Positions 24,601-51,839 of a stretch of 64,000 nt of DNA are shown one piece after another. Made by a program: the position numbers and the translations under genes. The stretch spans positions 62,001 to 126,000 of the forward strand of contig NIVC01000687.1 in NCBI GenBank assembly GCA_002269645.1. The letters run 5' to 3'. Each line of letters begins with the position of its first letter. Position 1 is the first letter of the stretch. The DNA comes from Macrostomum lignano (Eukaryota). A model generated the notes under the pieces. The model saw only the letters and a list, made by a program, of their open reading frames with translations, was not told the DNA's origin and did no database searches.

Positions 24601-27600
24601 CTGGCCTGATTGCCCGAATCGGCGAATCTGCAGCAAGCAGCTCGAGATGTCGTTCAATAAGTCGCGAGTTTATCAAGGAACTTGACAAAAACAAACTGGT
24701 CTATAAAACAGAAATTGTTCTTTACACAGACATGCAAAAGTTGCCCAGATAACATTTTTTATCAAAATTTTAAAATAGGAGCTAAATCTGCAAGCAAGTT
24801 TTTAACCTTCAAAATTATTTTCTTTTTAAAATTTTTGGAATTTCTATTATAATTCTTTTGAAAAAAGCAAAGTTTAAAATAAAGCTAATAGTTCCCAGAA
24901 TTTGAACTTTAACTGTCAGCAGCAACAAATTACTTGTTTGTGTTGTTTTAATCTCATTCTTTTTGTCGGATGAAGAGTGCGTTAAATAAAATGCCTGGAG
25001 CAAGACGCTCAATCATTAGTGGGATGAAGCTATTGAAGAGACTGACTGTTCATTGTCCCTGGCCCAAAGAGGGGGAATTGGGGTCGAAATCAATCATTTC
25101 AACGTACGGTTGCGCAAGCTTTCGACCCATGGGAAATAGCAGGTCTCATCAGACAAACACGAATACGAAGGATTTAGTGAGCATAGCAGTGGCTTTTACT
25201 AGAGGCAGGGGGCTGTGCGCAGCTTGGCGCACTTCAAGCGAAATTGTCACACAACCGACGAGGGGCATTGCTGCTCATTCTATGTGAGGCACACACTCAC
25301 ATAGGAGATTCCGATTTTGCTCCAAATTAATGTGACTGCATTCGGAATCGAGCCTGGGCTCCTCGCGCTGGACCACTCTATGGCGCTCCACAGAACTCCA
25401 TTTGGGCCATAGACAATAAGCAGCAAGTCTGCAATGGCTTGGTTCCCTCACTAAGTGTTAAATTGCCGGTTTTCTGAGGCTCAATTCGAAAATAAAATGT
25501 TTGAATATTTAATAATATACAATAATTTATTACACCTGGCCTAAAAGCAGATGTGCAACCGACAGCTTAGCGCATCTGAAGGCTGCGTACGGCTGTTCAG
25601 TCCAAGGACTGGAGGGGGGTCACCACACACCCCCAATTACCCCAGCGAATGCTGGAACCCATTTTACTGCTGCTGGGTAAACTGAAGCGATGCAGAGAGT
25701 TAAGTGGTCTTGCTCAAAGACACAAATTGTTCCAGTGGGATCGAGAATAGAACCTCCGACTTTCAAGTCGTAAGTCCGACGCTTTAACCACTAGGCTACT
25801 AGTACAACTCCCATTATTATGCTTCCAATAAGCAACCTGTGTCACAGCCTCTATATATCTTGTGAAAGTTCTATTAAGTAAAATTTATTTCAATGTCTCA
25901 TACAAATGACACACCTGGTCAGTCTGGGCTCCGGACAGCGGCTCGCGCAGTCGCACCTGAACCTCAAGCCGGCCGCCAACCGCCTTTCTGCCATCCATGA
26001 GATCAATGCCCCGGTGCAACGTGCACTGGGTCTCCAGGTCCTCCAGCTTCATTGTGGCCGACCCCAGCAGGCCGTCCTTCTTCAGAAAGCCACGCCGGTA
26101 CATGACATCGAATTTCAGTCCGCGAGTTTTGAACACCCGAGCGGTGCTGCGCGCTTTGCGGTTCACCTCGAAGCGGGTGGCGAAATCGTAGCTGGGATTG
26201 GCGCTGGCCTTCACCCAGCCCGTGCTCTGCGTCAGCGGCGACTCCGTGCTGATTGGCAGCTCGATTTTCACCTGCGGGGGTTGGTGGAATCTGCATTGAA
26301 TAGGGGATCAGGTTTGAGCTCTTAAACCAGCAGGTGAGATGGGGATGGCAAACCGGCAGGAGAGATGGGGATAGCAAACCGGCAGGTGAGATGGGGATGG
26401 CAAACCTACAGGTGAGATGGGGATGGCAAACCTACAGGTGAGATGGGGATGGCAAACCAGCAGGTGAGATGGGGATGGCAAACCAGCAGGTGAGATGGGG
26501 ATGGCAAACCAGCAGGTGAGATGGGGATGGCAAACCTACAGGTGAGATGGGGATGGCAAACCAGCAGGTGAGATGGGGATGGCAAACCAGCAGGTGAGAT
26601 GGGGATGGCAAACCAGCAGGTGAGATGGGATGGCAAACCTACAGGTGAGATGGGGATGGCAAACCAGCAGGTGAGATGGGGATGGCAAACCAGCAGGTGA
26701 GATGGGATGGCAAACCTACAGGTGAGATGGGGATGGCAAACCAGCAGGTGAGATGGGGATGGCAAACCTGCAGGTGAGTTGGTGAGGAGGGTATGGCCAT
26801 TGAGGAGCAATACCTTACCTGAGTCTCCAGATCTGACTCCTTAAAGCCTTCAGGCAGCGGCAGGCTGATGCCATTGAGCACTTTCACTTCAAGCGTGTTC
26901 TCCCCCAGATCCGGGTTGCACCTGACTGCGCTGACACTCTGCCAGATGAAGTTGAACTTCGGCGGCGGCCGCTTCAGCCGGCGCTGGCCCAGCAGGTAGT
27001 CCAGATCTGCGGTGGCGCTGCGGCCCAGCTTCGCCCAGCGGTCAGCAGTGGCGATTTGGCCCATGGATTTGAAGCGCCTGGCGTTCTCCTCGGCCAGGGC
27101 CAGCTTCTCCTGCGGGGGGAGGGGGCGGGCGTCCCAGAGTCACTTCAGAGTCGTTGCAGGTAGCACAGGTAAAATACGAAAGAAGTGACTTAATTTAAAC
27201 GACACTTGGTGCCAATTTGAGAAACTGTTTATTGTCTGAGACTCTTGTCTGAGACTCTGTCTGAGACGTTTCTATAACGACTTTTGAGGACGTATCTGAT
27301 TGGTATTTGAGACGTCACTTTATTGAATTAGAATCGCATTTCGCATTTATAACAACTCGATTTATTCTACTTGAGAAATGGCTCTTTAGCGATTCTTGTT
27401 GCGGTAAGACGATACTTTTAATGGGGAGACGAGAGAGAGAGTGAGAGAAGAGAGGGCGAGAGGAGAGGATTAGAGGAGAGGGGAGGGGACAGGGGAGGGT
27501 GAGAGGAGAGGGGAGGAGACAGGGGATGAAGAGGAGAGGGGAGGGGACAGGGGAGGGTGAGAGGAGAGGGGAAGAGACAGGGGAGGGTGAGAGGAGAAGG

Positions 27601-30600
27601 TGAGAGGGGAGGGTGAGAAGAGAGGGGAGGAGACAGGGGATGGAGAGGAGAGGGGAGGGGACAGGGGAGGGTGAGAGGAGAGGGGAGGAGACAGGGGATG
27701 AAGAGGAGAGGGGAGGGGACAGGGGAGGGTGAGAGGAGAGGGGAAGAGACAGGGGAGGGTGAGAAGAGAGGGGAGGAGACAGGGGATGGAGAGGAGAGGG
27801 GAGGGGACAGGGGAGGGTGAGAGGAGAGGGGAAGAGACAGGGGATGGAGAGGAGAGGGGAGTGGACAGGGGAGGGTGAGAGGAGAGGGGAGTGGACAGGG
27901 GAGGGTGAGAGGAGAGGAGAAGGCGAGAGGGGAGGATGAGAGGAGAGGGGAGGGGACAGGGGAGGGTGAGAGGAGAGGGGAAGAGACAGGGGAGGGTGAG
28001 AGGAGAAGGCGAGAGGGGAGGGGACAGGGGAGGGTGAGAGAAAGAGAGAAATAGGAGTATCACTTTTGCGAATAATAAATCAGGAAGTGGATGCCTAAAA
28101 CAGAATCAAATGCCAGAGGACAAAGGAGAGAAGGTCAAGGGTGCATTGAGTCTTTTCAAAGCAGAGGTTGCAAGCTTCAGGCCTGCATAACAAGTACAAA
28201 AGCGACGCGATACCTTGAGTGTCTTCTCCAGCGCGTCGTACACCGCCTCGGGATCTTTCAAAGCGTTGCCCTGCAGTTCCTTGGGCAGCTCGGACACTTC
28301 GCAGATGACAGCAGCGGATGGCGCAGCGGCGGGGGCGGCGGCAGCGGCAGCCGGTGCGGCAGATTCGCCAGGCAGAGGAGGCAGCTGAGCCAGGTCAACA
28401 GGCAGGCCAGCTTGAGCAGCCTGCAGCATCGGTTCGCAGCCTCTGGCGTAGCCCAGCATTCGCTTGGCGGTGGCCATGTCGCCAGTTCGCTTAGCCTGAA
28501 ACCAATTTTGCTACTGATAGTAATACGCAACGGGTTTCACTTGCTGTAGAGTCGCTACAGATTCCAGGTGGATTCTACATACAGGCTGTAAGAAAGCAGG
28601 GCTGAATAGAGACTTGTTGTAAGCGTATGTGCCAACGGCCCAGGCTCGATTCCAAGTGCAGTCACATTAATATGAAGCTAAATTAGAATCTCGGCTTGGC
28701 TCTGCGCGTGAAAATGGATGTCCTTGAGGGCCAACCCCAAGGCTCAGTGAAGTCTACATGTCTATAACGATTAAGAAAAGTTAGGGCCGCTGTACACTCC
28801 TGTGTGACAGTGTGTGCCTGTGCGTATGACTGCGTACGCATCCGCGCGCTTGTGTGCCTGCTCAGGGGAGTCGGCCAGAATGGGCAGCAATGCCTCTCGC
28901 CGGTTGTGAGGCAACGCCACTTAAAGTGCGCCAGGGTGCGTCAAGCCCCCTGCCTCTAACTATAACTAGCCCTGAGCATGCCTGAGCACATAAAAGTACA
29001 CCAATACTGTAGACCAGGCTCTCACCTGCACAGCGGCCAGTTTATACTGCTGCTGTCGCTGCATCAGCACCCGCAGCTGGGCGCCCGCCTTGCCGCCCAT
29101 GGCTGTTGCTGCTGCGGCGGCAGCGGCGCCAGCAGACGCTCCAGACGATCCGGCAGATTTTGCGGCAGCAGCCGGAGCGGCGGCTGGCAGCGGGCCAAAG
29201 CCAGGCGGAGGCGGCAGAGAGGAGAAGTCGTAGCCTGCGGCAGTCGGACCGCCCGCTCGCACGGCTGCGACAGCCTCAGCGTACTGCGACAGAATGCGGC
29301 CCATGCGCCGGGCCTTGCCGGAGTCGCCGGCCTCCTGCGCCTTCGTCTGCAGCTGCTTGTAGGCCGCCTGGCGGGCCGCCAGCTCCCCGGCGAGGCCTCC
29401 GCCAGAGGCGCTGGGTTTCGCTGCCGCAGGTTGAGCAGCCGGTTGCTGCTGTTGCTGCTGCTGAGGCGGCTGAGCTGCTTGAGGGGCCGGTGGCTTCGGT
29501 GTCAGCGGCGGCGGAGGTCCGGGCACGTCGTCGGGATCGACAGTTTCGCCGCCTTGAACGGCCTTGACCGCCTCGTCGAACTGGCGGTGCACGCGGAGCA
29601 GCTCGAGCGCCTCCTCGGTCTGGCCAGCGGATTTTGCGGCAGCGGCGGCCGCGCGGTACTCGCGAGACCGCTGCTCAAGCAGGGCCACCATCTTCGGGCC
29701 GCCCACGCCAGTTGAAGCGGCAGGCGGCGCCGCCGGGCCCGGGTTGACATAATCCAGCACCGCCTGCTGCACTTTGGCCGCCTGAGACTGCGGCTGAGAC
29801 GGCTGCGGGGGCTTCGGAGGCTGGGGCGGCAGCGAGTCCACGTCAACAGGGCGACCGCTGCGAGCATCAGTCATGGCTGAGTTCAACGTCTGCACGTTGC
29901 GCTCCAACCGGCGTCGTTTCGACGGGTCTTCGGTGGCGGCCAGCAGGCGCTGGTAGCCGGCGAGGCGTTCGGAAATCAGAGCGGACAGGTCCGGCTTCGG
30001 CGGCGAAGGCTGCCGCGGCGGTGGCGGTGGCTGGGGCGACTTTGAAGGCGAGCGGCCGGGTGATGGCGAACTACCGCCCAGGTAGCCCTGTGGCATGAAA
30101 TATACGAAGGGTGTCCCAGAAGTACAAGCTGTGTCACTCTGGTTAATTTGTTTATATTGGCCAAGTAGTCCAAGGACTGGGGGGGGGGGGGGGGGGTCCA
30201 AGGACTGAATGTGCCCTACTGCGTATCAACATGTCTCGATGTGCCTTAAGCATTACAAAGTGCCGCCTTAAGATTGACATCTGTTTCGGATTCTGTTGAT
30301 TTATCAAGTTCTCTATCTTACTATAGCTTTTTGCGTTCAAGTTCAGAAAACTTGCGTTCAATTTAAGATCGCGCTGAGTTGAAATAACAATTTAACTGAC
30401 AGACAGATCGCAGGAAGGATCGAACAGCGATCAAAGATGAAAGGTCTCTAACATGAACAAAGGCAAAGTCTATGGTTCTCAAACTGAACGCTAAAACGGT
30501 TTCGGCCCACAGCGAGACCCCCATTTTTTACCATAGACATCTCTGCCAGCCGCCACTTGCAGCCAATGTGGCCATGCTCACTTCAAATTCTTAAATTGAG

Positions 30601-32511
30601 TGCAATTGAACTCCTAGACTTTTTTGACCCTCAATAACCATCTTTGGCCCCTCTGCCTCTCCAGTGGATGTCTGTCTACCATGATTTTTCCATGGAGGAA
30701 AGAATAGAATGGAGTGCTAATCTGAGCCAGTTATTTTTATCTCGCTCGATTTTCGCTTTTAACATCCCTTTCCCCCCGTTCCTTCCTATTGGCTGAAAGC
30801 ATATTTTGATGCGAGCTCATACTATGCTGGGACAGACCTTTCAGAGGGGAACGAAAACGAAAACGAGACGAAAAATACTGTCTATGGCAGTCACGAGCCA
30901 ATAGGAAAGAACGGGGGGAAAGGGATGTTAAAAGTTCAGATCGAACGAGATAAAAAATAACTGGCTTAGATTAGCACTCCATTCTATTCTTTCCTCCATG
31001 GATTTTTCCCACAGACTATCATAACCGTTACTTTAAAAGTAGAAAGCATGCATCTTTTTATTGATTTCAATTTAACAGTCTTGATTGACGGAAATGATAT
31101 TGATATAATTAGATAGTTGTTTAACGTAGGATATTTCTAATGAAAATCAGTTTCATTAAGAAAATTTGATGGAGTTCGGTTTCACGGAGAGGATCTCGAT
31201 GATTTTTACGGTTTCACTGAGAGGATTTTTGATGGATTTTAGTTTCATGAAGAAAATTTGATTGTAATGATTGTAGTCATTTTTGTGATAGGTCAGAGAT
31301 AAAGTTGGGGGGGGGTTGCATACGCCCATTCAAGTTATTATTTCAGTAATTTCAGTAATGGAGGAGGCGGGTAACAAATTTCAATTGGTTTTATTGTCGA
31401 GCACCTTCAGTTAGCTAGATAAGAGAGTAGAGAGGAGTAAAAACAGAAAAGAGGAGAGATGATAGAAAAGAGAGTAAAGTGATTAGAGATGACAGATGGG
31501 AGAGAAGAGGGGAGTGAGGTGGGAATGAAGAGGGAGAGAGAAGAGAAGAGGAGAGAGAATAGAGAGTAGAGGGAAGAAACGAGAGAGCAGGAGAAAGGAG
31601 ATGAGAAATAGCAGAGAGGAGACAGGACAGATGAGAGGAGGGATAAAAGAGTACAGAGGAAATAGGAGAGAGGAGAGATCGGAGAGAGGAGAGAGGAGAG
31701 AGACGAGAGATGAAAGATCAGATAGATGAGAGAGATACGAGAGTAGAGAGGAGAAAGTAATAAGGAGAAAGAATAGGATCAAGATGAGAGCGCAGAGAGG
31801 AGAGATGAGAGATGAGAGAGAAAAGAGGAGAGATCAGACAGCAGGCTGGGTCTGGAGCAAACAGGGAAATTAAGATATGGTATTTGAAAACGTTTCGTAT
31901 AGGAATTGGAGACGATTTGGAAGATGGGATTTAAGTCATGGAATTTCAGCTGATGGATTTCAGGGAATATAGTTCCGGTAATGGGAGTTCTTCCCCTAAT
32001 CCCCTTTCTCCTCCGAAGGAGGAGTTCCACTCGTGTGAAGCCGAAGCTCTATTGAAAATGTATGCAGACATGATTATTGAGCCACAGCATTGGCTGCCGA
32101 CTTGTACTTGTGTAGTTGACAGAGAGAAACTGAGGGGTGGTGATCTGTCTCTACTCAATCCAACGCACACTTGAGTTATTCCATAACCCGTACCTGAAGC
32201 TCATTAAGCAGTTCGGGATCATTCTCATCAACGTCGATGTCCTCATCGTCCGGCAGATCGTCATCGGCAGCAGCAGCCAGGGGCCGCGTCTTGGCCTTCG
32301 CGGCGGCGGCGGCAGCAGGTGCTCGGCGCTTCTCTGGCGACGGCGTGGAGCTGTTACCACCGCCGAGCAGGTCGTTCAGTTCGGCCTCGAGGTCCGCGTC
32401 CTCTTCAACTCGGCCGTAGAGGCCCTCTTCGATCTGCTGCTGAGAGTTCAGGCCCAGGCCGCCCAGCAGGTTGGCCGTCATCTCATTCTTGGTGGGCTTG
32501 CGGCCCGCCAT
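21642..32511 (-). CDS. CC2D1: Coiled-coil and C2 domain-containing protein 1 / lethal(2) giant discs-like (911 aa; exons 32511-32194, 30087-29026, 28495-28214, 27109-26819, 26271-25915, 22067-21642)
   Basis: N-terminal DADLEAELNDLLG motif. Four DM14-like repeats (e.g. LEQRSREYRAAAAAAKSAG...FDEAVKAVQGGETVDPDDVPGPP). C2 domain with GLKFDVMYRRGFLKKD and MDGRKAVGGRLEVQVRLREPL. All six exons join in phase 0 with GT-AG introns. Confidence 0.9.
22130..22470 (+). mobile_element. Full-length tRNA-derived SINE family 1 with a CORE-like central domain
   Basis: TAGCCTAGTGG A-box and GGTTCGATTCC B-box. TGTGTCCTCGAGCAAGACACTTAACTC...CTGTAAAAT resembles the MIR/CORE domain. Includes (GT)n and the shared 3' tail. 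Confidence 0.75.
23228..24609 (+). CDS. Secreted PAN/apple + FReD protein FReD-B2 (281 aa; exons 23228-23294, 23410-23631, 23954-24082, 24182-24609), nested antisense in the last CC2D1 intron
   Basis: Signal peptide MPHFLLAVGFSLCLLTVVSA; PAN and FReD motifs; GT-AG introns; total 846 nt. Confidence 0.92.
26325..26775. repeat. 26-bp minisatellite in CC2D1 intron 4 (native copy, about 17 units)
   Basis: Same unit, with 25-bp and CTACAGG variants. Confidence 0.95.
27430..28050. repeat. Purine-rich degenerate tandem repeat (GGAGAGGAGAGGGGAGG...ACAGGG) in CC2D1 intron 3
   Basis: Nearly pure G/A tract with a recurring unit of roughly 25-27 nt. Confidence 0.9.
28640..28958 (+). mobile_element. SINE family 2 copy in CC2D1 intron 2
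   Basis: Reverse-complement homology to 14030-14300. Confidence 0.65.
30691..31000. mobile_element. 310-bp MITE with about 100-bp terminal inverted repeats and an 8-bp target-site duplication (hAT- or P-like non-autonomous element)
   Basis: Ends CATGGAGGAAAGAATAGAATGGAGTGCTAATCT / AGATTAGCACTCCATTCTATTCTTTCCTCCATG. GATTTTTC flanks both sides (30683-30690 and 31001-31008). Confidence 0.92.
31140..32034 (+). mobile_element. 3' portion of the Helitron-like element family in CC2D1 intron 1
   Basis: Contains the 30-bp internal repeat, the purine tract and the terminus CTCCTCC-GAA-GGAGGAG TTCCACTCGT, as in 57101-63815. Confidence 0.75.
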
Positions 32512-32526
32512 GCTGCAGGCGGGAGG

Positions 32527-33195
32527 CGGGTAGGGGCGATTCTTGAACTGGTAGGGGCGATTCTTGATCGGATAGGGGCAATTCTTCAGCTGGTAGGGGC
32601 GATTCTTGAGCGGGTAGGGGTGATTCTTGATCGGATAGGGGCGATTCTTGATCGGATAGGGGCGATTCTTGAGCTGGTAGGGGCGATTCTTGATCGGGTA
32701 GGGGCGATTCTTGATCGGGTAGGGGCGATTCTTGAGCGGGTAGGGGCGATTCTTGATCGGGTAGGGGCGATTCTTGATCGGGTAGGGGCGATTCTTGATC
32801 GGGTAGGGGCGATTCTTGAGTTGGTAGGGAAGATTTTTGAACTGGTAAGAGCGATTCTTAAGCGGGTAGGGGCGATGATTCTCAGGGTAGGATAGTGGCG
32901 ATTTTCAGTGTAGGATAGTGGCGATTCTCAGGGTAGGATAGTGGCGATGGGTAGGATACGGGGATTATCAGCGTAGAATAGTGGCGATTCTCAGGGTAGG
33001 ATAGGGGCGATTCTCATGGTAGGATAAGGGCGATTCTCAGGGTAGGATAAGGGCGATTCACAGGGTAGAATAAGGGCGATTCTCAGGGTAGGATAAGGGC
33101 GATTCTCAGGGTAGGATAAGGGCGATTCTCAGGGTAGGATAAGGGCGATTCACAGGGTGGGATAGTGGCGATTTGCAGGGTAGGATAGGGGCAAT
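32527..33195. repeat. 21-bp then 23-bp minisatellite (GGGTAGGGGCGATTCTTGATC / GGGTAGGATAAGGGCGATTCTCA) directly upstream of the CC2D1 acceptor
   Basis: Tandem periodicity; explains the RVGAILD-repeat ORF. Confidence 0.9.
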
Positions 33196-34283
33196 TTTTA
33201 AGAGTTGGACAGCTGTACTTTTAGGACTAGTGGTAATTAAGCTATTAAAACCTTTAATAGAACTAAATAATGCTTAATTAAAGATAAAAACATATGAGTA
33301 GAACTAGGAACACAGTAGTTGAGTAGAAACTCAAACATTAATTTATTGCATACAGACAGAGCAGTAAAGTTGACACTGCAGTGTCATCAAGTTAGTTATA
33401 ATTAACAAAATAACCGCTCGTAAACAATCGGAATAAAAATATTTTAGCAATACTCGGCAGTCCCAAATAAAAGTTCTGATAAAAACTGTACAAATTATGA
33501 GAGAAGTACCATGCATTTGAGTAACCGTTAGGCCCTAGACTGGTCCTAGACTCGAGCCTGGAATCGCCTGACCCACTGTATATTCAAACTAAACAATTGT
33601 TAAAGGAGAATCACAAAGTAAATATGAAGACATATTCGAAATTGGATAATTAAAGCACAAACTACTCACACAATGGAATATTGAATAGTAAGTTATACAT
33701 TACATTGTCATAATTTGTTCAACATTTCTCTATTATCACGAAAAGTAGATAGAAATTGCTTTCCGAGGATTCGTTTAACTCAATCAAAATTTATATTACT
33801 GTTAGTAGCTGAAACGCACGTAGCTACTATTTTAGGTAAGGAATTCTGTAAGTCCAATTGTTTACTAAATTGAAACCTGTTGACAATCAGTGAGAAAAAT
33901 CACTTGCTATGCACAGAGAAGAACGCATACTGTGCATAAAAAGAGGAGAGAATATTCAATAATACACACAAGAATAGACAAAAATTAACAAAACAGCTTA
34001 ATCGGCAAACACAATATAAAACTCAAGTCGGTCAGTATTTGGGAATAAAAAATATTCAAGATCATAGCATCAATTGTGTAATATCCAGTTTACATCTACA
34101 TTAGCATACAAAATGTAACATTGTTACCTTATTTAGGAAAATCAGCGCAAACAACATTTAATCCTATAAGCCCCATCAATTTAATGCTCGCTTGAGTATT
34201 TTGACTAGTGAAAACTACTAATAGTAAGATGATGCAGAGATAGTAATTCTGCCAGGCTACAAATAATGTACTTTAATGATGAT

Positions 34284-35194
34284 TCAAATAGGCAACGACT
34301 GGCCTCCCTGTTGAGTCATTGACGAAGCCGAAGAGCATGATGACGAAGAATTCTGAGCTTGATGATGCTGATGCTGATGAAGCAGCTGATGCTGATTGGG
34401 GCTGCTGGCTGAGTGGCCAGCCATACTAATGGTGACGCTGATGCCCAGGTTGCCGGTCTCAGCGAACAGAGAGGCGATGTTGGAGTCGAACACCAGGCAG
34501 TCCGAGTTGGCGATGGCCGCCTGCACACCGTCGTGAATTGACCGCGGCGTCGCCTCCCAGGTGAGCCGGCGGCGCTGGCCGTTGAGCTCCAACCGGTAGG
34601 CGAACTGGTCCGCCTGTTTGCGATTGCCGATGAGCTGCACAATGGCGTAGAACATCACCTGGTTCTCCAGGCTGCGCTCCTGCTTCTCCAGCACCAGCAT
34701 GAAGTTGTAGCCGAAGCAGCTCTGCATCATCACCCAGTCCACTGCGCCTGGCAGGTTGATGTCTGTGGCCAGGAAGATGATGTCCTCTCCCTGCAGGGTC
34801 GTGATGCTCTTGTGCTGCTGGGTCAGGTGATTCATCACCTGGGCGAGGATTGCAGGGGAACTGATTGAGAGACAGACAGACACAATTGTCATTTGTTCTG
34901 TTTAACACAGTAATTAATATGCTGATTAGTATAATTGCATCATAACTGTGTCAACTGTGCCAAAGGACAGTTAAACAAAAATTAAAAATGTGATAATCGG
35001 AATAGTAGTAGCGTAGAGGCACAGTTGGCAGAATTGCAGACTTTGCTAGGACAATTATTTTTCAGAATAAAACAGACAGACAGACAGACATATAGACAGA
35101 CAGACAGAGAGACAGAGAGACGAGAGACAGACAGACTGATAGACAGACAGAGAGACAGACAGACTGATAGACAGACAGAGAGACAGACAGACAT

Positions 35195-35269
<75 letters not shown>

Positions 35270-35426
35270 TACAGACAGACAGACACTAAGACAGACAGAC
35301 AGACAGACAATATGTCACACGGACACTATGACAGACGGACACTATGACACACGAACACAATCACAGACAGACAGACAGACAGATAGACAGATAGACAGAC
35401 AGACAGACAGACAGACAGCCAGAAAC

Positions 35427-35480
<54 letters not shown>

Positions 35481-36119
35481 GAACAGACAGAGGCGCAGGC
35501 TCACCTGCTCCAGAGAGCCCTGCCACTTGCAGCTGGCGCCGGGACACGGGCAGGTGTACGGCCTGAACTCGCAGACGTCCTCATGCTCAGTTTTGCTGGT
35601 GTGCAGGAAGCAGTCGGAGCAGCCGTTATTCACATACTTGCAGGGGAACAGCACCTGGGCGGCCAGCTTGTCCATGATCAGATTGCGGATGTTGGCCAGC
35701 GGTCCCCGGCAGGTCGGGCAGCTGCTCAGCTTGGAGCGGCAGGCGGCGCAGACAATGTGACCGGCCTGGCACTGCAGGATGGGCGGCAGGGCGAAGTCGA
35801 AGCAGACGGGGCACTCGAACAGCGACGCCAGCTCGAGATTGTGCGCCGGGTCGGCGGCGGCGGCGGCCGCGGCAGCAACAGCGGCGGCCACAGTTGATGA
35901 GGAGCCGCCAACTGCAGAGGCAGCGGCCGCGCCTCCGCCTACGCCAACCACAGCCGCGGTGGGCGGAGCTGCTGAACCTGACATCGGCTTGCCGCTGACA
36001 AACCCGACGGGGTGGTGGCCACCGCCTCCGTCCGCTGTTGAAGCACTGGAGGAAGCGGCAGCCTGACGGGCAATCAAGGAAGCGGACTTGCTATTGGAGC
36101 TCGGGTGAATTTTGCTCAT
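34284..36119 (-). CDS. SIAH: Seven-in-absentia (SIAH) E3 ubiquitin ligase (389 aa; exons 36119-35505, 34838-34284)
   Basis: [42 protein letters not shown], zinc fingers, and the substrate-binding domain [28 protein letters not shown]...[11 protein letters not shown]. Confidence 0.97.
35070..35490. repeat. (GACA)n microsatellite in the SIAH intron
   Basis: Direct observation. Confidence 0.97.
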
Positions 36120-37210
36120 GCTGTGCAGGGCGCCACTGGAATTTGGTGGGCAGACATTGAGCTGCTTTGCAGACTGGCGGGTCTCATTTCTGTGTTGAAT
36201 ATTACACTATATATTGCAGGCGACATGGTCCCAGCGCTGACAGCAATTCTGCCCATCCAACTGACTCATGAGCAATCGTAAGCCAATACACAGACACGCA
36301 CTCTAACGCCTTAACTTTCCAAAGGGCGCTCCGCTCATCCTATCTATAGCATCCTAAGAATCGTCTACTCTAGTCTAAGAGAAGCAAAGAAAAAACGGAA
36401 AAAAGTGAAACAATATCGTGTACTTCTATAGTTTTATAAAATAATGAAGAGTCATCAACTTTCTAGGCGCAATGGTCAACATGTTTGCACGCATTAAAAA
36501 GAGTACATTTAAATTAGCAAGCTTAGTAAATTTGTTATCAGTTATGGCATCAAAAAATTAAGCCGTAAATTGTAGGCACTTGATAAAAACGACAAAAAAT
36601 AGCGATACGTACTACTTAGTGTCTGTGAGAAGTCGTAGCATTGCATGTATAAATACGAAAGCTGCTTCGTGAAACAAGAACAGAAAAAAGCCTCTATGAT
36701 CAGTAGAAAAATTTTAATTTACAAGGGGTATAAAATAGAAAATTTCGTTGTGTCAAAAAAGTATAAAGCTGTGCGAAGAATAATTTATAAGGCACTTGTA
36801 AATATTCGCAAATTTAAGATACTACTTGAAGTGCGAGTTTTAGTAGTATCTCAAAAAACTCGATGAAAGAATAAGAGTTTGGTCTTTTTTAAGAATATTG
36901 GTTTAGCACTAATCTTAATACAATACTGAGCTTTTGAGTCGGTGTACTTTACTAACAAACCTGTAAAGTATGTGCACTTTTACTATTATACTATCTGATG
37001 TGTCAGGTGACAGTTCATTATGTACTTTTAAAATCTATACATGAGCTGACAAACAACCCTGTGTACTTTAGAACGACGCGACACTATCGGAGTAATCAAT
37101 GTGTACTTTTACATGTCTATAAAGTACATGTACTTTTATGGCGTAATCCAGTCTATCAAGTATTTGTACTTTCTACAAGACTATCCGAGCTGTCAAACAA
37201 GCATTACGCA

Positions 37211-37535
37211 TCAGACGTTGGCTTCCTCGCAGGCGTCAATCCATTCGCTGTAGACATCGATAGGCTCAGTCAGGTAGTTGATGCTAGTCTGGAAGTCTTC
37301 TAGGCAGACTCGACAGGACACGCTGCCCACTCTGGCCTGCTTGTTGCTGAGGAGTTTTGGGGGTGGGGGTAAAACCATCTTGCCAGCTCAATCACTATTA
37401 ATAAAATGATAAAACTCACAGTTTCACTTCGCAAGATTTCTCGTGATTGCAGAACGGGCAGTTGAACTGCACATCCAGCGGCACAATCACTTTTGCTTTG
37501 GGCGGCGGCTTGCGCGCCTTTCTGCGCCGGCCCAT
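37211..37535 (-). CDS. ELOF1: Transcription elongation factor 1 homolog (exons 37535-37420, 37346-37211); missed by the ORF track
   Basis: Manual splice gives [83 protein letters not shown]. The 73-nt intron is GTGAGT...CAG. Confidence 0.97.
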
Positions 37536-38049
37536 CACGGCTGGAATGGAGAGCATGTACTTTGTTTATAGGAGGTCCAACTGACACCAAGGACTACTAA
37601 AGTACATCTTGATCCTGCATGTACCCTCTCTGTGCCTTGGAGGTTGGGCCTCATGGCTGTGATCCGCATGGCAATCTACATAGTGGCGCGAGAGCTCGAT
37701 GCATTTACTAAATCCGGTAAAAGTACATTTTAAGGATGACGCCTACAACAAAAATGAAATAAGGATACTCGTAAAACACTTTATAGAAATTTGACTACAA
37801 TTTATTTTTTCCATTCTTTTTCAACAACACAAGCTACTACTGTAAAAGCGGCAGTCAAGTACAATGTTGTTGGCAATCAAGCAACAGCAAATGGAAGAAG
37901 ACTTCTTAAAGACCAAAAGGGTGTTGAAGATAAAATGCACAATTTGACTTTTGTGTTTATTGGGGATGCCATAGATAAAGGAACAGAAATTCGGTTTTAA
38001 TAAGTGTAGGGATTTACAAACCATGCTTTTAATTCAGTTTTATCTAATC

Positions 38050-38240
38050 GGCTGCCTGTCTGTCTGCATGTCTGTCGGTCTGTCTGCCTGTCTGTCTGTC
38101 TGCCAGTCAGTCAGTGTCTGCCTGTCAGTCAGTCAGTCAGTCAGTCAATCAGTCAGTCAGTCAGTCAGTCAATCAGTCAGTCAGTCAGTCAGTCAATCAG
38201 TCAGTCGTCTGTCTGTCAGTCTGTCTGGTCTGCATGTCTA

Positions 38241-38311
<71 letters not shown>

Positions 38312-38354
38312 GCCTGTCTGTCTGTCTGTCTGTCTGTCTGAGTGTCTGTCTGAG

Positions 38355-38423
<69 letters not shown>

Positions 38424-38432
38424 GCCTGTCTG
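38050..38432. repeat. (GTCT)n/(CAGT)n microsatellite between WDR18 and ELOF1
   Basis: Direct observation. Confidence 0.97.
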
Positions 38433-38527
38433 TGTATAATTTTGAGCGTGTGAAAGTTTATACCCCCGTATATCCATGGCAACAACTTAACACACACAAA
38501 CTCTATAATAGAGTTTCAGTTTCCCCA

Positions 38528-41500
38528 CTAATTTTTCCCCGAAATCAACTGCAGAGCCCGACGCTTCAAATCGTCCAGCCGTTTGGCTTCGGCTGCTGCC
38601 GCCGCTGCTGCAGCTGATTTGGACTTGACCGCATCGCCCTGAGCTTCAGGCTTTTCTTCATCAACCACAGACTCGCGCATCTCAGCCTCCTCTGCTACAT
38701 CATCTTGAATCTCTTCCGGCTGCTCCCGCACTGCCTCAGCTTCGGCATCTTCGACGGGCGGCATCGGCGGGAACCTCAGCAGCAGTTCAGAGTCGCCGAA
38801 GTCACCGCGGCCAAGCCTCAGTCGGGCTGTCCTGGCAGCTGACGATCGCTGCTGCTGCTGCTGAAGCAGGCTCCGCTTCAGCTGACCGTGCAGCATCAGA
38901 GGATGCCGCCGAGCTGGAGCACCAGCTGCTGCCAAGTTGGGAGTGGCAATAAGCATGCAGGCGATGGGGCAGGCGGAGTGCTTGAGGCTGAGCAGCTGCG
39001 CGAGGCCCGGGCAGGTCACGATCAGCACGCGGCCCCGGCTCGAGCCTACGGCCAGCCGATCGGACAAAGGCGAGATCACGACGGCGACAGCGTCGCCATC
39101 TTCAGCTGGCCAGAGCCGCTGGGTGGCCAGGCGGCTTTCGGTGCTGCAGGCATCGCCTTGGAGGCCCTGCTGGTGAGGCTGCAACTGCGACTGCTGCAGC
39201 AGAGGCCTCATCATGCAGACCCGGATGGCCAGGCCAGCTGAGCAGCCGAAGTAGGCGTGGGTCAGGGTGGCGTCGCCGCCGAGGGGTGGCTGCGGCAGCA
39301 GCAGCTGCAGCAGGCGGCTGCCAGTAGAGCAGCAGAACAGGCTTACCTGATGAAGGAGGTAGGCAAATGGCTTGGGGACTCAGGATGTCGATATAACCGT
39401 TCCTCTTGAGTCTGCTCTAAGAGACTCGGGTTTATGACCCTAAGGTCTAATATATGGAATCTGGGAGGCTGGCCCAGCAAACTGGGGATCTGGGAGGCTG
39501 GCCCAGCAACTGAGGATTTGGGAGGCTGTCCCAGCAACTGAGGATCTGGGAGGCAGTGACCCAGCAACTGAGGATCTGGGAGGCAGTGACCCAGCAACTG
39601 AGGATCTGAGGCTGGTGGCCCAGCAACTGAGGATCTGGGAGGCAGTGACCCAGCAACTGACGATCTGATCTGAGGCTGGTGGCCCAGCAACTGAGGATCT
39701 GGGAGGCTGGTGGCCGAGCAACTGAGGATCTGGGAGGCTGGTGGCCCAGCAACTGAGGATCTGGGAGGCAGTGACCCAGCAACTGAGGATCTGGGAGGCA
39801 GTGACCCAGCAACTGAGGATCTGGGAGGCAGTGACCCAGCAACTGAGGATCTGGGAGGCTGGCCCAGCAACTGAGGATCTGGGAGGCTGGCCAAGCAATG
39901 GCTCCAGTCAGGGATCTAACACTTGATGATAAACACCAAACTATGATCAACAAAGACCCACCGGAGCAACACCTTAAACAGAGCCTCAAAGCCCACAGCT
40001 CGCACCTGGCCATTAGCAGCCCAGGCGGCCAGCATGCAGTTATGCGGAGCCGCACCGATCGGCCGCACGCCGACAGCCGGGCACATGGCAGCCACCCAGC
40101 TGTGCAGCGGTCGCACAGCGGAGGCGCCGCCGCTCCCGGTCGCCAGCTGCAGCTGGGCGCTGGTCAACGCCAAGCCGGAGTCCCACAGGCAGACTAAACC
40201 GTCATCCCCTGATGAGGCCAGATAGTGGGGAGGCTGCGACCAGGCCAAACAGCGAATGCGGCGATGATGGGAGCCAGACAGCACTGACAGCAGGTCACCT
40301 GTGCTGGCGTGCCACACCTGAGGGAGGGGGAGGGGGAGCGGGTGAGATGTGCTCTTGATGAGTCTTCTTTTAGTCTTGAGATTTTGAGTAGGATTTGAGA
40401 GATTTTAGGTAGGATTTGGGAGATTTCAGGTAGGATTTGGGAGATTTAGGTAGGATTTGGGAGATTTTAGGTAGGATTTAGGAGATTTCAGGTAGGATTT
40501 GGAAGATTTTAGGTAGGATTTGGGAGATTTCAGGTAGTATTTGGGAGATTTTAGGTAGGACTTGAGATTTTAGGCAGGATTTAAGAACTTTTAGGCAGGT
40601 TTTGGGAGATTTTAGGAAAAATTTGGCGAGTTTATTATCAAGTTCAAAAAAGGTAAAACGGTAGGTCGCAGACTGTCAAGTTGAGGTTTTCAAGATATTT
40701 TTATCTACTACTAAAATGGAATTATATATGACGTTTACGAATGCTGGACAACAGAATATAAATAATTTTAATGACATAATTTGTACAGGTTTTTATTCGA
40801 GGTTGCAGTCTAGCGATCAGAGCGTCGGACTCCCAACTAGAAGGTCAGTGGTTCGATTCTCTCAACCCACTCAGAACAATTTGTGTCCTCTAGCAAGACG
40901 CTTCATTGCTTCAGTTTACCCAGCTGTAAAATGGGTTCCAGCATTAGCTGGGGTTACTGAGGGTTGTGTGGAGTCCCCCAATCCCCCCCCCCAGTCCTTG
41001 GACTAAACAGCAATACGCAGCCTTCAGGTGCGCCGTGGAATGGCTTCGGCTGAGCTGTCGGTTGCCCAATTGGGGCAGGTGTAATCAATTACGAGCGTAT
41101 TATTATTATAACGTAGCACTAATTAGATGACGAAGCACCTGAGTGTCTTAACACGTTGAGGTTACTCTAACCTTTTACCCGCAGCATCTGTGACTATGTC
41201 ATACTTTTACTTCAACATTTAAGACTGCTCAACCCTCCTAGCCTTACCAGAATCCGCTCGCCCAGAGCAGCAGCACAGATTTCGCCGCAATCAGTGAACG
41301 CCAAAGATGTGGCCTGACTGGGGAGAACGATTCGCCGGTGCTGCTGCTGTTGCTGCTGCTGTTGCTGCATCTGCCAGCAGCAGATCAGTGGTTTACCAGC
41401 AGCCGCAGAGAACACGGTGCCATAGTCTGCTGCACAGCACAAACTGCCAGGCACCGGTGGCTCAGTCTGACGGCACTGATTCAGTTGGGTGCCGCTTTGT

Positions 41501-41556
41501 AAATCATAGCAGCTGGTTTGGCTGCCCCCGGCGGGTCCCGAGTCGCTTACAATGAG
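38528..41556 (-). CDS. WDR18: WD40 protein WDR18/Ipi3-like (exons 41556-41248, 40317-40006, 39346-38528); no in-frame ATG in the first exon
   Basis: LIVSDS...[10 protein letters not shown]...[14 protein letters not shown]...IL|[27 protein letters not shown]...[13 protein letters not shown] follows the WDR18 layout recalled from the human protein. Coiled-coil-like C-terminus. Phase-0 GT-AG introns. Confidence 0.8.
39460..39895. repeat. 28-31-bp minisatellite (CCCAGCAACTGAGGATCTGGGAGGC...) in WDR18 intron 2
   Basis: Tandem periodicity. Confidence 0.93.
40385..40620. repeat. 20/21-bp minisatellite (GGTAGGATTTGGGAGATTTTA)n in WDR18 intron 1
   Basis: Tandem periodicity. Confidence 0.9.
40800..41105 (+). 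mobile_element. SINE family 1 copy in WDR18 intron 1
   Basis: tRNA-like head (GGTTCGATTC), CORE-like TTGTGTCCTCTAGCAAGAC...CAGCTGTAAAATGGG, and the shared tail. Confidence 0.75.
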
Positions 41557-41580
41557 CTGCAGCAGATCAAGTTTGAATCT

Positions 41581-44500
41581 TTTTTAAGGGACTATTATGG
41601 GAACTATGGCCTTAAACATTTTAGTTAACTATACTTAGCTAATAATACTTATATGGATACTTGATTTTATTTGATTTTAAAGTGCTTTGTAAATGGTGAG
41701 TGCAGGCTGCCTTAAAAGTTTGCTTCCACTTTAAATAGTATGTCTTTATGTAAATTAAGTATTCAACTAAATGTAATACCAAATTAATTCAGATTATGCA
41801 TGAGCAAAAACCAGCCAGAATTAAGTCTTGGAATGACATTATCTGACAATGTAAGCATTTTGAAGGGGTTGCATGAGAGAACACACACTGGTGTTCATAA
41901 TAAATGGTGTTTTTTTATATGCGAAATATATGATCTTTATTAAATAAAACATAGGTTTAATAGCTACAATAACTTCATTTGTTACTATCAGTTTTTGTCA
42001 ATCAATAGTTACTTAAGACTGAGCATTACCATCCATGATTATTGATTCATAACATAGTTAGGTCTCCAACATAACAATGTATAGGCTAAGATATAATAAA
42101 TAAATAATAGCTATGTACTACATAATAGCTTTTGTGATTTCTTGAAAAATTTACTAATAAAACATTGTATTGGTTTTCACTCTAGGGATTATGTTAAGGC
42201 TATCCTTCACTGCTAACTTATTAGAGCTAGGTTTTTGTAGTATATAGGTGCTATAGCATCCTAACTTTCATTTTGATACATTGGATTTTAAATACCTTGA
42301 CACCTATTAGAATTAGCAATTAGTGGGAACAAGAATAATATTAAATTTGAAAGAAAATCCTAAAGCCAAATTGAATGATTTTTGTTTGAATGAAAATATC
42401 AAATAATTTTTTTGAAATTTAAAATTTCTTTTATCTAAAATATAGAGCTATACTCTATAAAAGAGATATAGACCAGACATGCACAACCTTGGGAATCACT
42501 TGGCTGTTTCTATTGGAAACATATACATGTAAGTTGCTATTGGCTAAGAGCAGTCACGTGACTACTACTCTGTTCAATAGTGACTTACATGTGTGTGTTG
42601 GCAATAGAAATGGCCAGGTGAATCCCTAGATTGTGCCCAAGCATGATCTAGACCTTTATTGAAATAAGTGGAAAAAGATGTTCAACCATCTTGGAAAATC
42701 TTGGATCTTAAAAATTTTTGGAATTTTCTAGTGACATGTTGCAGCTAGAGTTGAAGCAGATGGTTTTGGGTAAATGGCAAGAGTAACTATGACTGTCTTA
42801 TAAAGGCTAAATGCATCATCATCTAATTAGTACTACACCTATATTTGGTGCAAAGGTTAACAGGTTTTGCTTTGCGTTGTATTTTTGAGCTACAATTTTA
42901 GACCCCATGTCATATATCTATAGGTTTTCTACACTTATTCCAATAGGGATCTAGACCACTCAATAACTTGGGAAACCTAAAACTTAAAAGTCTACTAGAG
43001 CTATTGTTTGATAAGTTTGATAAGTTTTAGGAGGGAGCTCCTAAGGGTAGAGCAATAGATTCTTTTAGAAATAAATAAATGTTGCTAGTTTTAAAGCTTT
43101 TGTGAGGGGAGCTTTAAAGTCACATAGGTTGTTGTTGTTGTTAAACAAGGTGGGTAGCCTAGGGGCTCCCACAGATCAGCCTAGGGAAGGGCTCTGCTGC
43201 TAGATCTGTGTGGCCATACTGCTAGGGGCATATAGCCCAAGAGGCCATTATTGGGACCAGGGCCTAAAGGCCTAGACATACCTAACTGGGGCTACTAGCT
43301 CAAACCTATAGACTAAGGCACTGCCAACACAAAGTGGAATCAGGGACAGTGCTAAGACCAAGTCCACTCAAGCCACCCCCAGCAGACAAATCCTGAAAGT
43401 GCACAAAAAAGATTAGAAAAGCTTTGGAATACTACTAAAAGTGGTCTAAGAGTGAGGAAACCCCAAAGTCTATAGAAAAGGCTTAATTTTGAAGTGAGTC
43501 TAGGCAGCCTATTTACCAAGGGCAAGTATCTTATCAACCCTATTGGAATAAATGTTGAAAACACATAGATATATACATGCTTTAGAAAAAGAGTCAAATT
43601 ATTTTACAGCACTTTATGATTATTAGAGATGTTCCAAAAGAGCATTTTTGTTGAAATCAAAATTGGCAAACTTTCCAAAATTGAAATTGAAATTTTTCAA
43701 AATCAATTTCAGAAAAACAAAGTTTAGTATGACCAACATTGACTGTTTTACTTTTGATTTACTGCTAATGCAAAAAGAAATATATGTATATGTAGCAGAA
43801 ATTAGTTTATTTTTGGCCACTTTTTAGACAATTCCAAAATCTTGACTTTTGAATTGTTTTAAATCAAAATTTGCTCCTAAAAATTCCTAATTTTGGAAAT
43901 TTCAAATTCAAATTTTGGAACATCTCTAAGCATTATAAATTACAAGTGTATAGGCTCCTTCTACAAAGGTATTAGACCTCCCATGTATATTTATTTGCTA
44001 GAGCAACAGCCAGCAAGAAAGGGCAGCATACATGTAGGTGCTTTATGCCTATGCTCGCGCTACACTTTAGAAAATTTTCAAAAGTGCACTGGACACTATC
44101 TACAGTTTTACAACTTTTTATAGGGCTTATCAAGAGGTAAAGATGCTATAGAAACCTTCCTATAAGGCTGCAAGCCTCAAGGCTTTTTCACTATACAGCT
44201 CTAAACAATTTTGGATATAAGGGCCAAGCCAATGGGTTAGGGAAGGGCACAAAGGGCAAGAGGAACCCAGACTCAGCCTAGGATTAGTTAGTTAGGGACT
44301 CAAGCAATAAGATTTTTGATGTCACATGTTGTTGTTAGGATAATAGGGGCTTCAATTATAGTAAGATTAATATTTTCACTTTCAATGCAAAGGGAGCTCT
44401 TAAGTCCATAGGATTGGGGCTTTAACAAAAGAGATTCTAATGCTATATAACCATTGTAGTTAAGATGAGATCATGAGAATTGCCTTAAAAAATTTCTTAT

Positions 44501-48170: not shown

Positions 48171-48281
48171 GGCGATTTCTTAGTTTCCCGCGTTTAATTA
48201 TAACCCCCACCCCCCACCACCCTTGAATAGAGGGCGAAATAATTCCGTAAAATAATTAAACGCGGGAATCTTCAGGATCGC
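48171..48281. repeat. Inverted repeat of about 31 bp (perfect 17-bp core TTCCCGCGTTTAATTAT)
   Basis: 48184-48201 is the reverse complement of 48252-48268. Confidence 0.8.
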
Positions 48282-51796: not shown

Positions 51797-51798
51797 AT

Positions 51799-51839
<41 letters not shown>

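What the first reader, a model, noticed from the sequence alone, without database searches (positions are those of the whole stretch)
32511..41570. Candidate SL trans-spliced operon WDR18 - ELOF1 - SIAH - CC2D1
Four conserved genes are co-oriented with gaps of about 1.0, 1.1 and 1.8 kb, and each coding start abuts a splice acceptor: CC2D1 CCTCCCGCCTGCAG|C-ATG, SIAH CGCCCTGCACAG|C-ATG, ELOF1 CTCTCCATTCCAG|CCGTG-ATG, WDR18 CTGCTGCAG|CTC (in frame). I saw no TATA boxes at these starts, unlike the secreted genes. SL trans-splicing and operons are established in flatworms; this particular operon is inference.
Basis: partly seen in the sequence, partly recalled or inferred. Interest (0 to 1): 0.8.

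Follow-up and report, generated by a model that had tools for sequence, protein, structure and literature searches.

The report
Known-type flatworm operon, four genes
This is a stretch of the flatworm Macrostomum lignano genome where four housekeeping genes (WDR18, ELOF1, SIAH, CC2D1) lie head to tail and are very probably made from shared precursor RNAs cut apart by spliced-leader trans-splicing, an arrangement already catalogued genome-wide in this species.

Summary
The window is the reverse strand of scaffold NIVC01000687.1 of the public M. lignano assembly Mlig_3_7. The four genes, their common orientation, the gaps of 987, about 1,080 and 1,771 nt, and the quoted acceptor strings are all real.

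The operon reading is supported indirectly.
- GenBank gene names follow the published transcriptional-unit scheme. They put WDR18, ELOF1 and SIAH in one unit on this scaffold. In a near-identical paralogous copy they put WDR18 with ELOF1, and SIAH with CC2D1.
- Annotated coding regions of WDR18 and SIAH start, without a start codon, right at acceptor sites.
- In the paralogous copies the acceptor AG is overwritten by the last bases of the spliced leader (..CATG) at three junctions. I read this as a scar of polishing the assembly with RNA-seq, and it marks real trans-splice junctions.

WDR18 has no genomic ATG, and the leader's terminal AUG is in frame.

A single promoter and the poly(A) sites remain untested, and trans-splicing of CC2D1 is only inferred. 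About 15% of M. lignano genes are already classed as operonic, so this is ordinary. Interest is low.

The parts
38528..41559 (-). WDR18-like gene, first cistron. Exons 41556(or 41559)-41248, 40317-40006, 39346-38528. There is no genomic ATG at the 5' end.
   Evidence: Model. Best long PDB match is human WDR18. GenBank paralog proteins PAA60855.1 and PAA83585.1 are 5'-partial and start LIVSD at this acceptor.
41557..41562 (-). Trans-splice acceptor region of WDR18. The junction inferred from the scar is 41560|41559 (..ctg|CAGCTC in this copy; the native sequence is probably ctgcag|CAG).
   Evidence: Paralogs L002 and L003 read gATTGCATG|CAGCTC, which is the last 8 nt of the leader joined to CAGCTC. 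The leader AUG is in frame at either junction.
37541..38527 (-). WDR18-to-ELOF1 spacer, 987 nt, holding the WDR18 3'UTR and a 382-nt (ACAG)n array at 38052-38433.
   Evidence: AATAAA at 37961 and 37806. No GT[AG]AG donor motif.
37211..37540 (-). ELOF1, second cistron. Acceptor ccattccag|CCGTG at 37541|37540, ATG at 37535, exons 37535-37420 and 37346-37211.
   Evidence: Pfam Elf1, model. At the last bases before the junction the paralogs read ttCATG (L002) and ttCCTG (L003) where this copy has ttCCAG.
36136..37210 (-). ELOF1-to-SIAH spacer, 1,075 nt to the annotated SIAH junction. It holds the ELOF1 3'UTR and most of the AAAGTACA motif cluster.
34284..36135 (-). SIAH, third cistron. ATG at 36119, exons 36119-35505 and 34838-34284.
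   Evidence: Pfam Sina domains. GenBank PAA78468.1 from this scaffold and PAA83587.1 both start GALHSM. L003 reads ttCATG at this junction.
32513..34283 (-). SIAH-to-CC2D1 spacer, 1,771 nt. Two minisatellites (21-mer and 23-mer units, 32527-33196, 670 nt) abut the CC2D1 acceptor.
   Evidence: In the paralogs the array is about 1.05 kb and 2.1 kb long.
21642..32512 (-). CC2D1 (Lgd-like), fourth cistron. Acceptor cctcccgcctgcag|C at 32513|32512, ATG at 32511. Exons 32511-32194, 30087-29026, 28495-28214, 27109-26819, 26271-25915, 22067-21642. Product 911 aa.
   Evidence: Model, Pfam DM14 and C2. My model minus its first four residues is exactly GenBank PAA78467.1 (907 aa).
41560..44000 (-). AT-rich region (33% GC) upstream of WDR18, where the outron and the presumed operon promoter should lie. 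No element has been located.
   Evidence: No annotated protein-coding gene in the 8.5 kb upstream of the WDR18 start (window 41557-50086).

Best explanation
The four genes form a spliced-leader-resolved operon of the kind already catalogued in M. lignano.

Proposed mechanism. RNA polymerase II starts somewhere in the AT-rich region upstream of WDR18 and reads through all four genes. Each upstream cistron is cleaved and polyadenylated. Each cistron's 5' end is made by trans-splicing the 35-nt leader (ending ..TTGCATG) onto an acceptor just upstream of the coding region.

Junctions. WDR18 at 41560|41559 and/or 41557|41556. ELOF1 at 37541|37540. SIAH at 36136|36135, with 36121|36120 as a possible minor site. 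CC2D1 at 32513|32512.

Start codons. WDR18 has no genomic start codon and takes its initiator AUG from the leader, giving M(Q)LIVSD.... For the other three genes the leader AUG opens a short out-of-frame upstream ORF of 2, 15 and 10 codons that ends at or overlaps the true AUG.

Shown: gene order, gene models, the acceptor sequences, the shared transcriptional-unit names and the leader-derived bases at three junctions. Inferred: trans-splicing of CC2D1, the poly(A) sites, the single promoter, and translation from the leader AUG.
For: - The window is 100% identical to Mlig_3_7 scaffold NIVC01000687.1.
- GenBank names: on this scaffold WDR18, ELOF1 and SIAH are Mlig023217 g2, g3 and g4. On paralog L003, WDR18 and ELOF1 are Mlig008524 g1 and g2, and SIAH and CC2D1 are Mlig010407 g3 and g4. 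A prefix marks a 95%-identity cluster of assembled transcriptional units (PMC5730564). Unrelated genes can therefore share a prefix only through a unit that spans them.
- Two WDR18 paralog proteins are 5'-partial and start LIVSD at the acceptor. Two SIAH proteins start GALHSM right after TTCCAG|.
- Across about 800 aligned non-repeat columns, the only multi-base differences among the three copies sit on the last bases before these three junctions, and every one changes towards the leader's terminal sequence. The assembly was polished with Pilon using RNA-seq.
- A model from the older ML2 assembly, held as three identical entries, keeps the native TTCCAG at the SIAH junction.
- All four acceptors have CAG plus a pyrimidine tract, and three fit the published trans-splice motif [T/C]TNCAG.
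- There is one GT[AG]AG donor motif in the three spacers against about 5 expected.
- No ATG-bearing phase-0 exon with a decent donor lies within 4.4 kb upstream of WDR18.
- ML2 gene models fuse ELOF1 with SIAH. The field reads such chimeras as a sign of polycistronic precursors (PMC12582326).
Against: - No RNA read was examined directly.
- The spacers are about 1-1.8 kb from stop codon to acceptor, whereas the main mode in M. lignano operons is about 100 nt after repeat subtraction. After removing tandem repeats they are 605, 1,075 and 1,101 nt, and these figures still include 3'UTRs of unknown length.
- On paralog L002 all four genes fall in separate units. On this scaffold CC2D1 (Mlig010407g6) is in a different unit from the other three.
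- Units assembled from multi-mapped reads over repeats, or from read-through transcription, could join neighbouring genes falsely.
- The annotated 5' ends of ELOF1 (75, 78 and 80 aa in the three copies) and of this scaffold's CC2D1 are ragged and lie inside the coding region, so those gene models do not define a junction.
- CC2D1 shows no scar in any copy.
- A TATATAG conserved in all three copies lies 78 nt upstream of the SIAH junction.
- An unexplained AAAGTACA motif cluster flanks ELOF1. Both features could belong to internal promoters.
Confidence: 0.7

Rival explanations
1. Each gene, or some of them such as SIAH or CC2D1, has its own promoter in the spacer and is trans-spliced as a single-gene transcript. 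The multi-gene transcriptional units would then be read-through or assembly artefacts. A mixed case also belongs here, for example WDR18, ELOF1 and SIAH as one operon with CC2D1 separate.
For: - About 60% of trans-spliced M. lignano genes are not in operons.
- The spacers are ten times the typical 100-nt operon spacing.
- The units split differently in the three copies, and CC2D1 is in a separate unit on this scaffold.
- A conserved TATATAG lies 78 nt upstream of the SIAH junction, and TATAAA lies 30 nt upstream of the ELOF1 junction.
- An AAAGTACA cluster surrounds ELOF1.
- The SIAH-to-CC2D1 spacer varies from 1.8 to 3.6 kb among the copies.
Against: - Every adjacent pair is bridged by a published unit in at least one copy.
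- TATA-like hexamers occur at about chance density in this AT-rich DNA.
- The published operon criterion, under 1 kb after repeat subtraction, is probably met once 3'UTRs are subtracted.
- No opposite-strand gene interrupts the cluster.
Confidence: 0.22
2. The acceptors are ordinary cis-splice acceptors that receive non-coding, or for WDR18 ATG-bearing, 5' exons from each gene's own transcript. There is no trans-splicing.
For: An acceptor sequence alone cannot tell cis from trans use. In parasitic flatworms many acceptors serve both (PMC12582326).
Against: - Leader-derived bases (..CATG, ATTGCATG) sit at three junctions in the RNA-polished paralog copies.
- The annotated mRNAs of WDR18 and SIAH start exactly at the acceptors.
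- Donor motifs are nearly absent from the spacers.
- No suitable ATG-bearing first exon lies within 4.4 kb upstream of WDR18.
Confidence: 0.03

Closest known systems
M. lignano spliced-leader operons and 'transcriptional units' (Wudarski et al. 2017, PMC5730564; Ustyantsev and Berezikov 2021, PMC8629364)
   Same: Same species and the same single 35-nt leader. The genes are co-oriented, conserved housekeeping genes. Acceptors fit [T/C]TNCAG. Spacers are inflated by micro- and minisatellites. The genes already carry unit-derived names in GenBank.
   Different: Nothing essential differs. The spacers sit at the long end of the distribution. Unit continuity was recovered only piecewise across the three paralogous copies.
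C. elegans SL2-type operons
   Same: A polycistronic precursor is resolved by 3' end formation coupled to trans-splicing of the downstream cistrons. Operon size is two to eight genes, mostly housekeeping (from established knowledge).
   Different: M. lignano has one leader and no specialised SL2. The spacers here are about 1 kb rather than about 100 nt. No Ur-like element has been identified.
Leader-donated initiator AUG in Schistosoma mansoni (Cheng et al. 2006, as summarised in PMC9851317)
   Same: The leader ends in AUG. The WDR18 open frame starts at the acceptor, in frame with that AUG, and has no genomic ATG in this copy.
   Different: Translation from the leader AUG was not tested here. 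I found no described case of this in Macrostomum.
Chimeric gene models as operon indicators in parasitic flatworms (PMC12582326)
   Same: Two ML2-era models (A0A1I8GIA0, A0A1I8GTU7) fuse ELOF1 and SIAH across the spacer.
   Different: I could not tell whether those models rest on RNA evidence or on prediction from sequence alone.

Membership tests
M. lignano SL operon (criteria of Ustyantsev and Berezikov 2021) | Immediately adjacent genes on the same strand with no opposite-strand gene between them | tested here: met
   Gene models. The GenBank gene list for the locus shows only these four genes, all on one strand.
M. lignano SL operon (criteria of Ustyantsev and Berezikov 2021) | The downstream gene or genes carry the leader at their 5' end (leader-containing RNA-seq reads) | tested here: inconclusive
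   Reads could not be mapped. Indirect support: leader-derived bases at the ELOF1 and SIAH junctions in paralog copies, and annotated SIAH mRNA starting at TTCCAG|. For CC2D1 there is only a good acceptor.
M. lignano SL operon (criteria of Ustyantsev and Berezikov 2021) | Transcript-to-transcript distance under 1 kb after subtracting repeats | tested here: inconclusive
   Stop-to-junction distances minus tandem repeats are 605, 1,075 and 1,101 nt. Any 3'UTR longer than about 100 nt brings all three under 1 kb, but the poly(A) sites are unknown.
M. lignano SL operon (criteria of Ustyantsev and Berezikov 2021) | One precursor RNA from one promoter | tested here: inconclusive
   Shared unit prefixes imply assembled transcripts spanning WDR18-ELOF1-SIAH, WDR18-ELOF1 and SIAH-CC2D1. 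The promoter and start site are not testable with these tools.
Leader-AUG-initiated mRNA (Cheng et al. 2006 type) | The leader ends in AUG, and the acceptor joins it in frame to the conserved ORF with no intervening stop | tested here: met
   Leader sequence. The in-frame ORF is 480 or 481 codons at either junction.
Leader-AUG-initiated mRNA (Cheng et al. 2006 type) | No usable genomic start codon | tested here: met
   There is a stop upstream and no ATG before residue 63. The alignment to human WDR18 starts at residue 17 against 23, so little or nothing is missing. No candidate ATG exon lies within 4.4 kb. The paralogs show an in-frame ATG, but it lies inside the presumed scar.
Leader-AUG-initiated mRNA (Cheng et al. 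2006 type) | Translation actually starts at the leader AUG | not testable with these tools
   Needs ribosome profiling, N-terminal proteomics or a reporter.

The most novel reading that the evidence does not exclude
The leader-like bases at the junctions may not all be polishing artefacts. In the two sister paralogs of WDR18, the sequence ATTGCATG|CAGCTC could be a real germline capture of leader sequence. The route would be gene conversion from reverse-transcribed trans-spliced mRNA, which would turn a leader-donated AUG into a genome-encoded in-frame start codon (ATG CAG CTC). That would be a way for trans-spliced genes to become conventional ones.

The more sober version is more likely. The Mlig_3_7 assembly carries RNA-derived leader scars that overwrite acceptor AGs at expressed trans-spliced genes. 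These scars can be used to map junctions from the assembly alone, and they distort acceptor-motif statistics.
Probability: 0.07. Interest if true: 0.65.

Novelty: already known. Interest (0 to 1): 0.18.

Why it matters
As an operon it adds one more instance to about 10,000 M. lignano genes already classed as operonic, and its units are already in the GenBank annotation. Three by-products are useful.

- The trans-splice junctions for SIAH and WDR18 are corrected.
- WDR18, a ribosome-biogenesis factor, appears to depend on the leader for its start codon. Trans-splicing would then be obligatory for making the protein. This explains why GenBank marks these coding regions 'partial'.
- The reference assembly seems to carry leader-derived 'scars' at acceptor sites because RNA-seq was used for polishing. 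That would corrupt splice-site motifs and promoter or outron design for transgenesis. It also offers a cheap way to find junctions.

Tried and rejected
- Looking for transcript contigs that carry the leader. Contiguous window ORFs and P0004 were not on record. The protein database holds only UniRef and NCBI M. lignano models, with no RNA-derived ones.
- The first homology search was swamped by poly-Q and poly-A words. The last one, with masked CC2D1, gave only Capitella and one unnamed hit.
- Synteny outside the species. Capitella CC2D1 has no SIAH neighbour. No other flatworm locus could be reached. A second M. lignano ELOF1 family sits in an unrelated neighbourhood.
- Supplements of three papers held no per-gene trans-splicing table for these genes.
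- There is no leader RNA gene in the window, no Rfam family and no tRNA.
- I tested whether leader-like words are generally enriched in the window, as a natural outron element. They are at chance level, so that idea was dropped.
- I tested whether the AAAGTACA cluster is specific to ELOF1. It is absent at the second ELOF1 locus.
- TATA-like hexamers and poly(A) signals were scanned. Both are too frequent in AT-rich DNA to decide anything.
- The first ELOF1 model was off by one base at the donor and was corrected.
Full report
**What the window is.** The WD40 gene model is 97% identical to a UniRef protein of Macrostomum lignano. A GenBank locus fetched through a cluster member (L001, scaffold NIVC01000687.1 of assembly GCA_002269645.1, Mlig_3_7) is 100% identical over 21,559 bases to window 50086-28528 in reverse. 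The window is therefore the minus strand of a published, annotated scaffold. Exons are GC-rich, spacers are AT-rich, and almost every intron and spacer holds a micro- or minisatellite.

**Checking the observation.** All four genes are on the minus strand, and I built GT-AG models for each.
- WDR18-like: 41556-41248, 40317-40006, 39346-38528.
- ELOF1: 37535-37420, 37346-37211.
- SIAH: 36119-35505, 34838-34284.
- CC2D1: 32511-32194, 30087-29026, 28495-28214, 27109-26819, 26271-25915, 22067-21642. This gives 911 aa with all introns in phase 0, so the gene reaches well outside the reported interval.

Pfam confirms Elf1, the three Sina domains, and DM14 repeats plus C2. The WD40 protein has no WDR18-specific Pfam hit. 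Its only long collinear match among solved structures is human WDR18, residues 17-251 against 23-243, E 2e-11.

The gaps from stop codon to the quoted acceptors are 987, 1,090 and 1,771 nt. The quoted acceptor strings are present. Only about 3-4% of all ATGs in the window have a CAG with a pyrimidine-rich tract ending 0-5 nt upstream. Three out of three is therefore not chance.

The statement that there are no TATA boxes does not hold literally. TATAAA lies 30 nt before the ELOF1 acceptor, TATATA lies 93 nt before the quoted SIAH acceptor, and TATAAG lies 97 nt before the WDR18 acceptor. Their density is what AT-rich DNA gives anyway, so they decide nothing.

**What is known for this species.**
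- M. lignano has one 35-nt leader, CGGTCTCTTACTGCGAAGACTCAATTTATTGCATG.
- About 30% of its genes are trans-spliced, and these are enriched for conserved genes.
- The top motif at trans-splice acceptors is [T/C]TNCAG.
- About 15% of genes are called operonic, using a cut-off of 1 kb between adjacent trans-spliced genes after subtracting repeats. The main mode is near 100 nt (PMC8629364).
- The genome paper assembled 'transcriptional units', found that almost 7% are precursors with several trans-splice sites, and cut them into genes at trans-splice and poly(A) signals (PMC5730564).

**Evidence from the public annotation.** Exact look-ups of the encoded proteins returned their GenBank names.
- This scaffold: WDR18 3' part = Mlig023217g2, ELOF1 = Mlig023217g3, SIAH = Mlig023217g4, CC2D1 = Mlig010407g6.
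- Paralog L003 (NIVC01000414.1): Mlig008524g1, Mlig008524g2, Mlig010407g3, Mlig010407g4, in the same gene order.
- Paralog L002 (NIVC01002101.1): four different prefixes.

All three loci have the same four-gene order. A prefix marks a 95%-identity cd-hit cluster of transcriptional units. Unrelated genes can share a prefix only if some unit spans them. Published units therefore bridge WDR18-ELOF1-SIAH, WDR18-ELOF1 and SIAH-CC2D1, so every adjacent pair is bridged at least once. The paper itself notes that units tend to break in repeat-rich operon spacers, which fits the piecewise recovery.

The annotated proteins also place two 5' ends. Two WDR18 copies are '5'-partial' and begin LIVSD, exactly at the acceptor and without a methionine. 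Two SIAH copies, including the one from this scaffold, begin GALHSM. The annotated ELOF1 starts are ragged (75, 78 and 80 aa) and so is this scaffold's CC2D1 start. Those models do not define a junction.

**Leader 'scars' in the assembly.** I aligned the four start regions of the three copies. In about 800 non-repeat columns every difference is a single base, except three runs, and each run sits on the last bases before a junction.
- ELOF1: ttCCAG| in this copy, ttCATG| in L002, ttCCTG| in L003.
- SIAH: ttCCAG| in this copy and L002, ttCATG| in L003.
- WDR18: gatCTGCTG|CAGCTC in this copy, gATTGCATG|CAGCTC in L002 and L003.

Each change goes towards the leader's last bases (..ATTGCATG) and removes the acceptor AG. 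The assembly was polished with Pilon using RNA-seq reads mapped by STAR. Leader-bearing reads forced onto the genome would produce exactly this, starting with the A-to-T change two bases before the junction.

An ML2-era protein model, held as three identical entries, translates ..NSSGALHSM.., which corresponds to the native TTCCAG at the SIAH junction. Leader-like words are not otherwise enriched in the window.

I therefore read these runs as artefacts, and as indirect RNA evidence that the leader is joined at 37541|37540, at 36136|36135, and to CAGCTC at 41560|41559. The CTG before CAGCTC in this copy may itself be a one-base scar of a native CAG|CAG tandem acceptor. That last point is inference. 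CC2D1 shows no scar in any copy.

**Start codons.**
- WDR18: joining the leader gives an in-frame ORF of 480 or 481 codons, MLIVSD.. or MQLIVSD...
- There is a stop upstream, no genomic ATG before residue 63, and no ATG-bearing phase-0 exon with a reasonable donor within 4.4 kb upstream.
- Use of the leader AUG as initiator is documented for Schistosoma. It is in frame in 28% of trans-spliced mRNAs and required by more than 40 cDNAs (summarised in PMC9851317).
- For ELOF1, SIAH and CC2D1 the leader AUG opens out-of-frame upstream ORFs of 2, 15 and 10 codons.

**Distances.** After removing tandem repeats, the stop-to-junction distances are 605, 1,075 and 1,101 nt. Any 3'UTR over about 100 nt puts all three under the published 1-kb cut-off, but well above the 100-nt mode. 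The minisatellite before CC2D1 is 0.67, 1.05 and 2.1 kb long in the three copies. The unit spanning SIAH and CC2D1 comes from the copy with the longest array. Donor motifs are scarce in the spacers, 1 against about 5 expected, P about 0.04.

**Rivals.** Separate promoters combined with trans-splicing cannot be excluded.
- The spacers are long.
- Unit continuity is only piecewise.
- A TATATAG conserved in all three copies lies 78 nt before the SIAH junction.
- An unexplained AAAGTACA cluster flanks ELOF1.

Pure cis-splicing is unlikely given the scars and the annotated 5' ends. My weights are about 0.7 for the operon, about 0.2 for separate or mixed promoters, and 0.03 for no trans-splicing.

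**Comparison and novelty.** This is a member of the already described M. lignano operon class, and its units are already in GenBank. It differs from C. elegans operons in having one leader and long, repeat-filled spacers. It is ordinary. The by-products are the corrected junctions, the leader-dependent start of WDR18 and the polishing scars. These are of practical rather than conceptual interest.

**What led nowhere.** Transcript contigs could not be reached. Paper supplements held no per-gene data. Synteny outside the species could not be tested beyond Capitella, which lacks it.

Noticed in passing
window 36943-37727 (also 34267 and 33214): The octamer AAAGTACA occurs 16 times in the window against 1.9 expected. 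Ten copies flank ELOF1 in both orientations, including a perfect 16-nt palindrome AAAGTACATGTACTTT at 37121-37136 and one copy 10 nt before the ELOF1 acceptor. The cluster is absent at the second ELOF1 locus (L004). It could be a regulatory or 3'UTR element. It is unexplained.
   Followed up: partly
L002 and L003 at the WDR18, ELOF1 and SIAH junctions; window 41560-41562: The reference assembly carries leader-derived bases (..CATG, ATTGCATG) in place of acceptor AGs. This is most likely because Pilon polishing used RNA-seq. If it is general, it corrupts acceptor sites genome-wide.
   Followed up: partly
window 22068-25914, gene at 24112-24606 (+): A gene with a fibrinogen C-terminal domain lies on the opposite strand inside the last intron of CC2D1. 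Related copies lie at 4553-5005, 13018-13470 and 18274-18726.
   Followed up: partly
window 1-7000 ~ 14081-20200; 162-1638 ~ 14242-15713 ~ 25311-26782; 9883-10900 ~ 21098-22123: Tandem segmental duplications of about 11-14 kb carry copies of the last two CC2D1 exons (C2 domain and C-terminus) together with the fibrinogen-like genes. The extra CC2D1 pieces look like orphan exon copies.
   Followed up: partly
window 40780-41070 (WDR18 intron 1); copies at 22130-22411, 25570-25783, 437-560, 14517-14639, 11197-11275: A dispersed repeat of about 270 bp with a tRNA-like B box (GGTTCGATTC), probably a SINE. It is not called as a tRNA and has no Rfam match.
   Followed up: partly
UniRef A0A1I8GIA0 (P0004) and A0A1I8GTU7 (P0030): Older ML2 gene models fuse ELOF1 and SIAH into one protein by treating the spacer as an intron. 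These are mis-annotations typical of operons.
   Followed up: yes
L003 10001-13153: The WDR18 copy on NIVC01000414.1 is annotated as 342 aa with a divergent C-terminus. This is either a frameshift or an assembly error in exon 3.
   Followed up: no
L004-L006: A second ELOF1 gene family (Mlig004690g1, three copies) lies in an unrelated neighbourhood next to a BTB gene. Its annotated 5' end also abuts an acceptor (CTCCAG|). A 10-nt match to the leader (TTTATTGCAT) lies about 17 nt upstream of that acceptor.
   Followed up: partly
window 49600-52300, 53326-54453 (-), 57105-62615: Reverse-transcriptase-like ORF fragments. A single-exon 376-aa ORF with weak PAN and Laminin_G-like matches. A 3.3-kb tandem duplication (57105-60392 ~ 59312-62615).
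   Followed up: no
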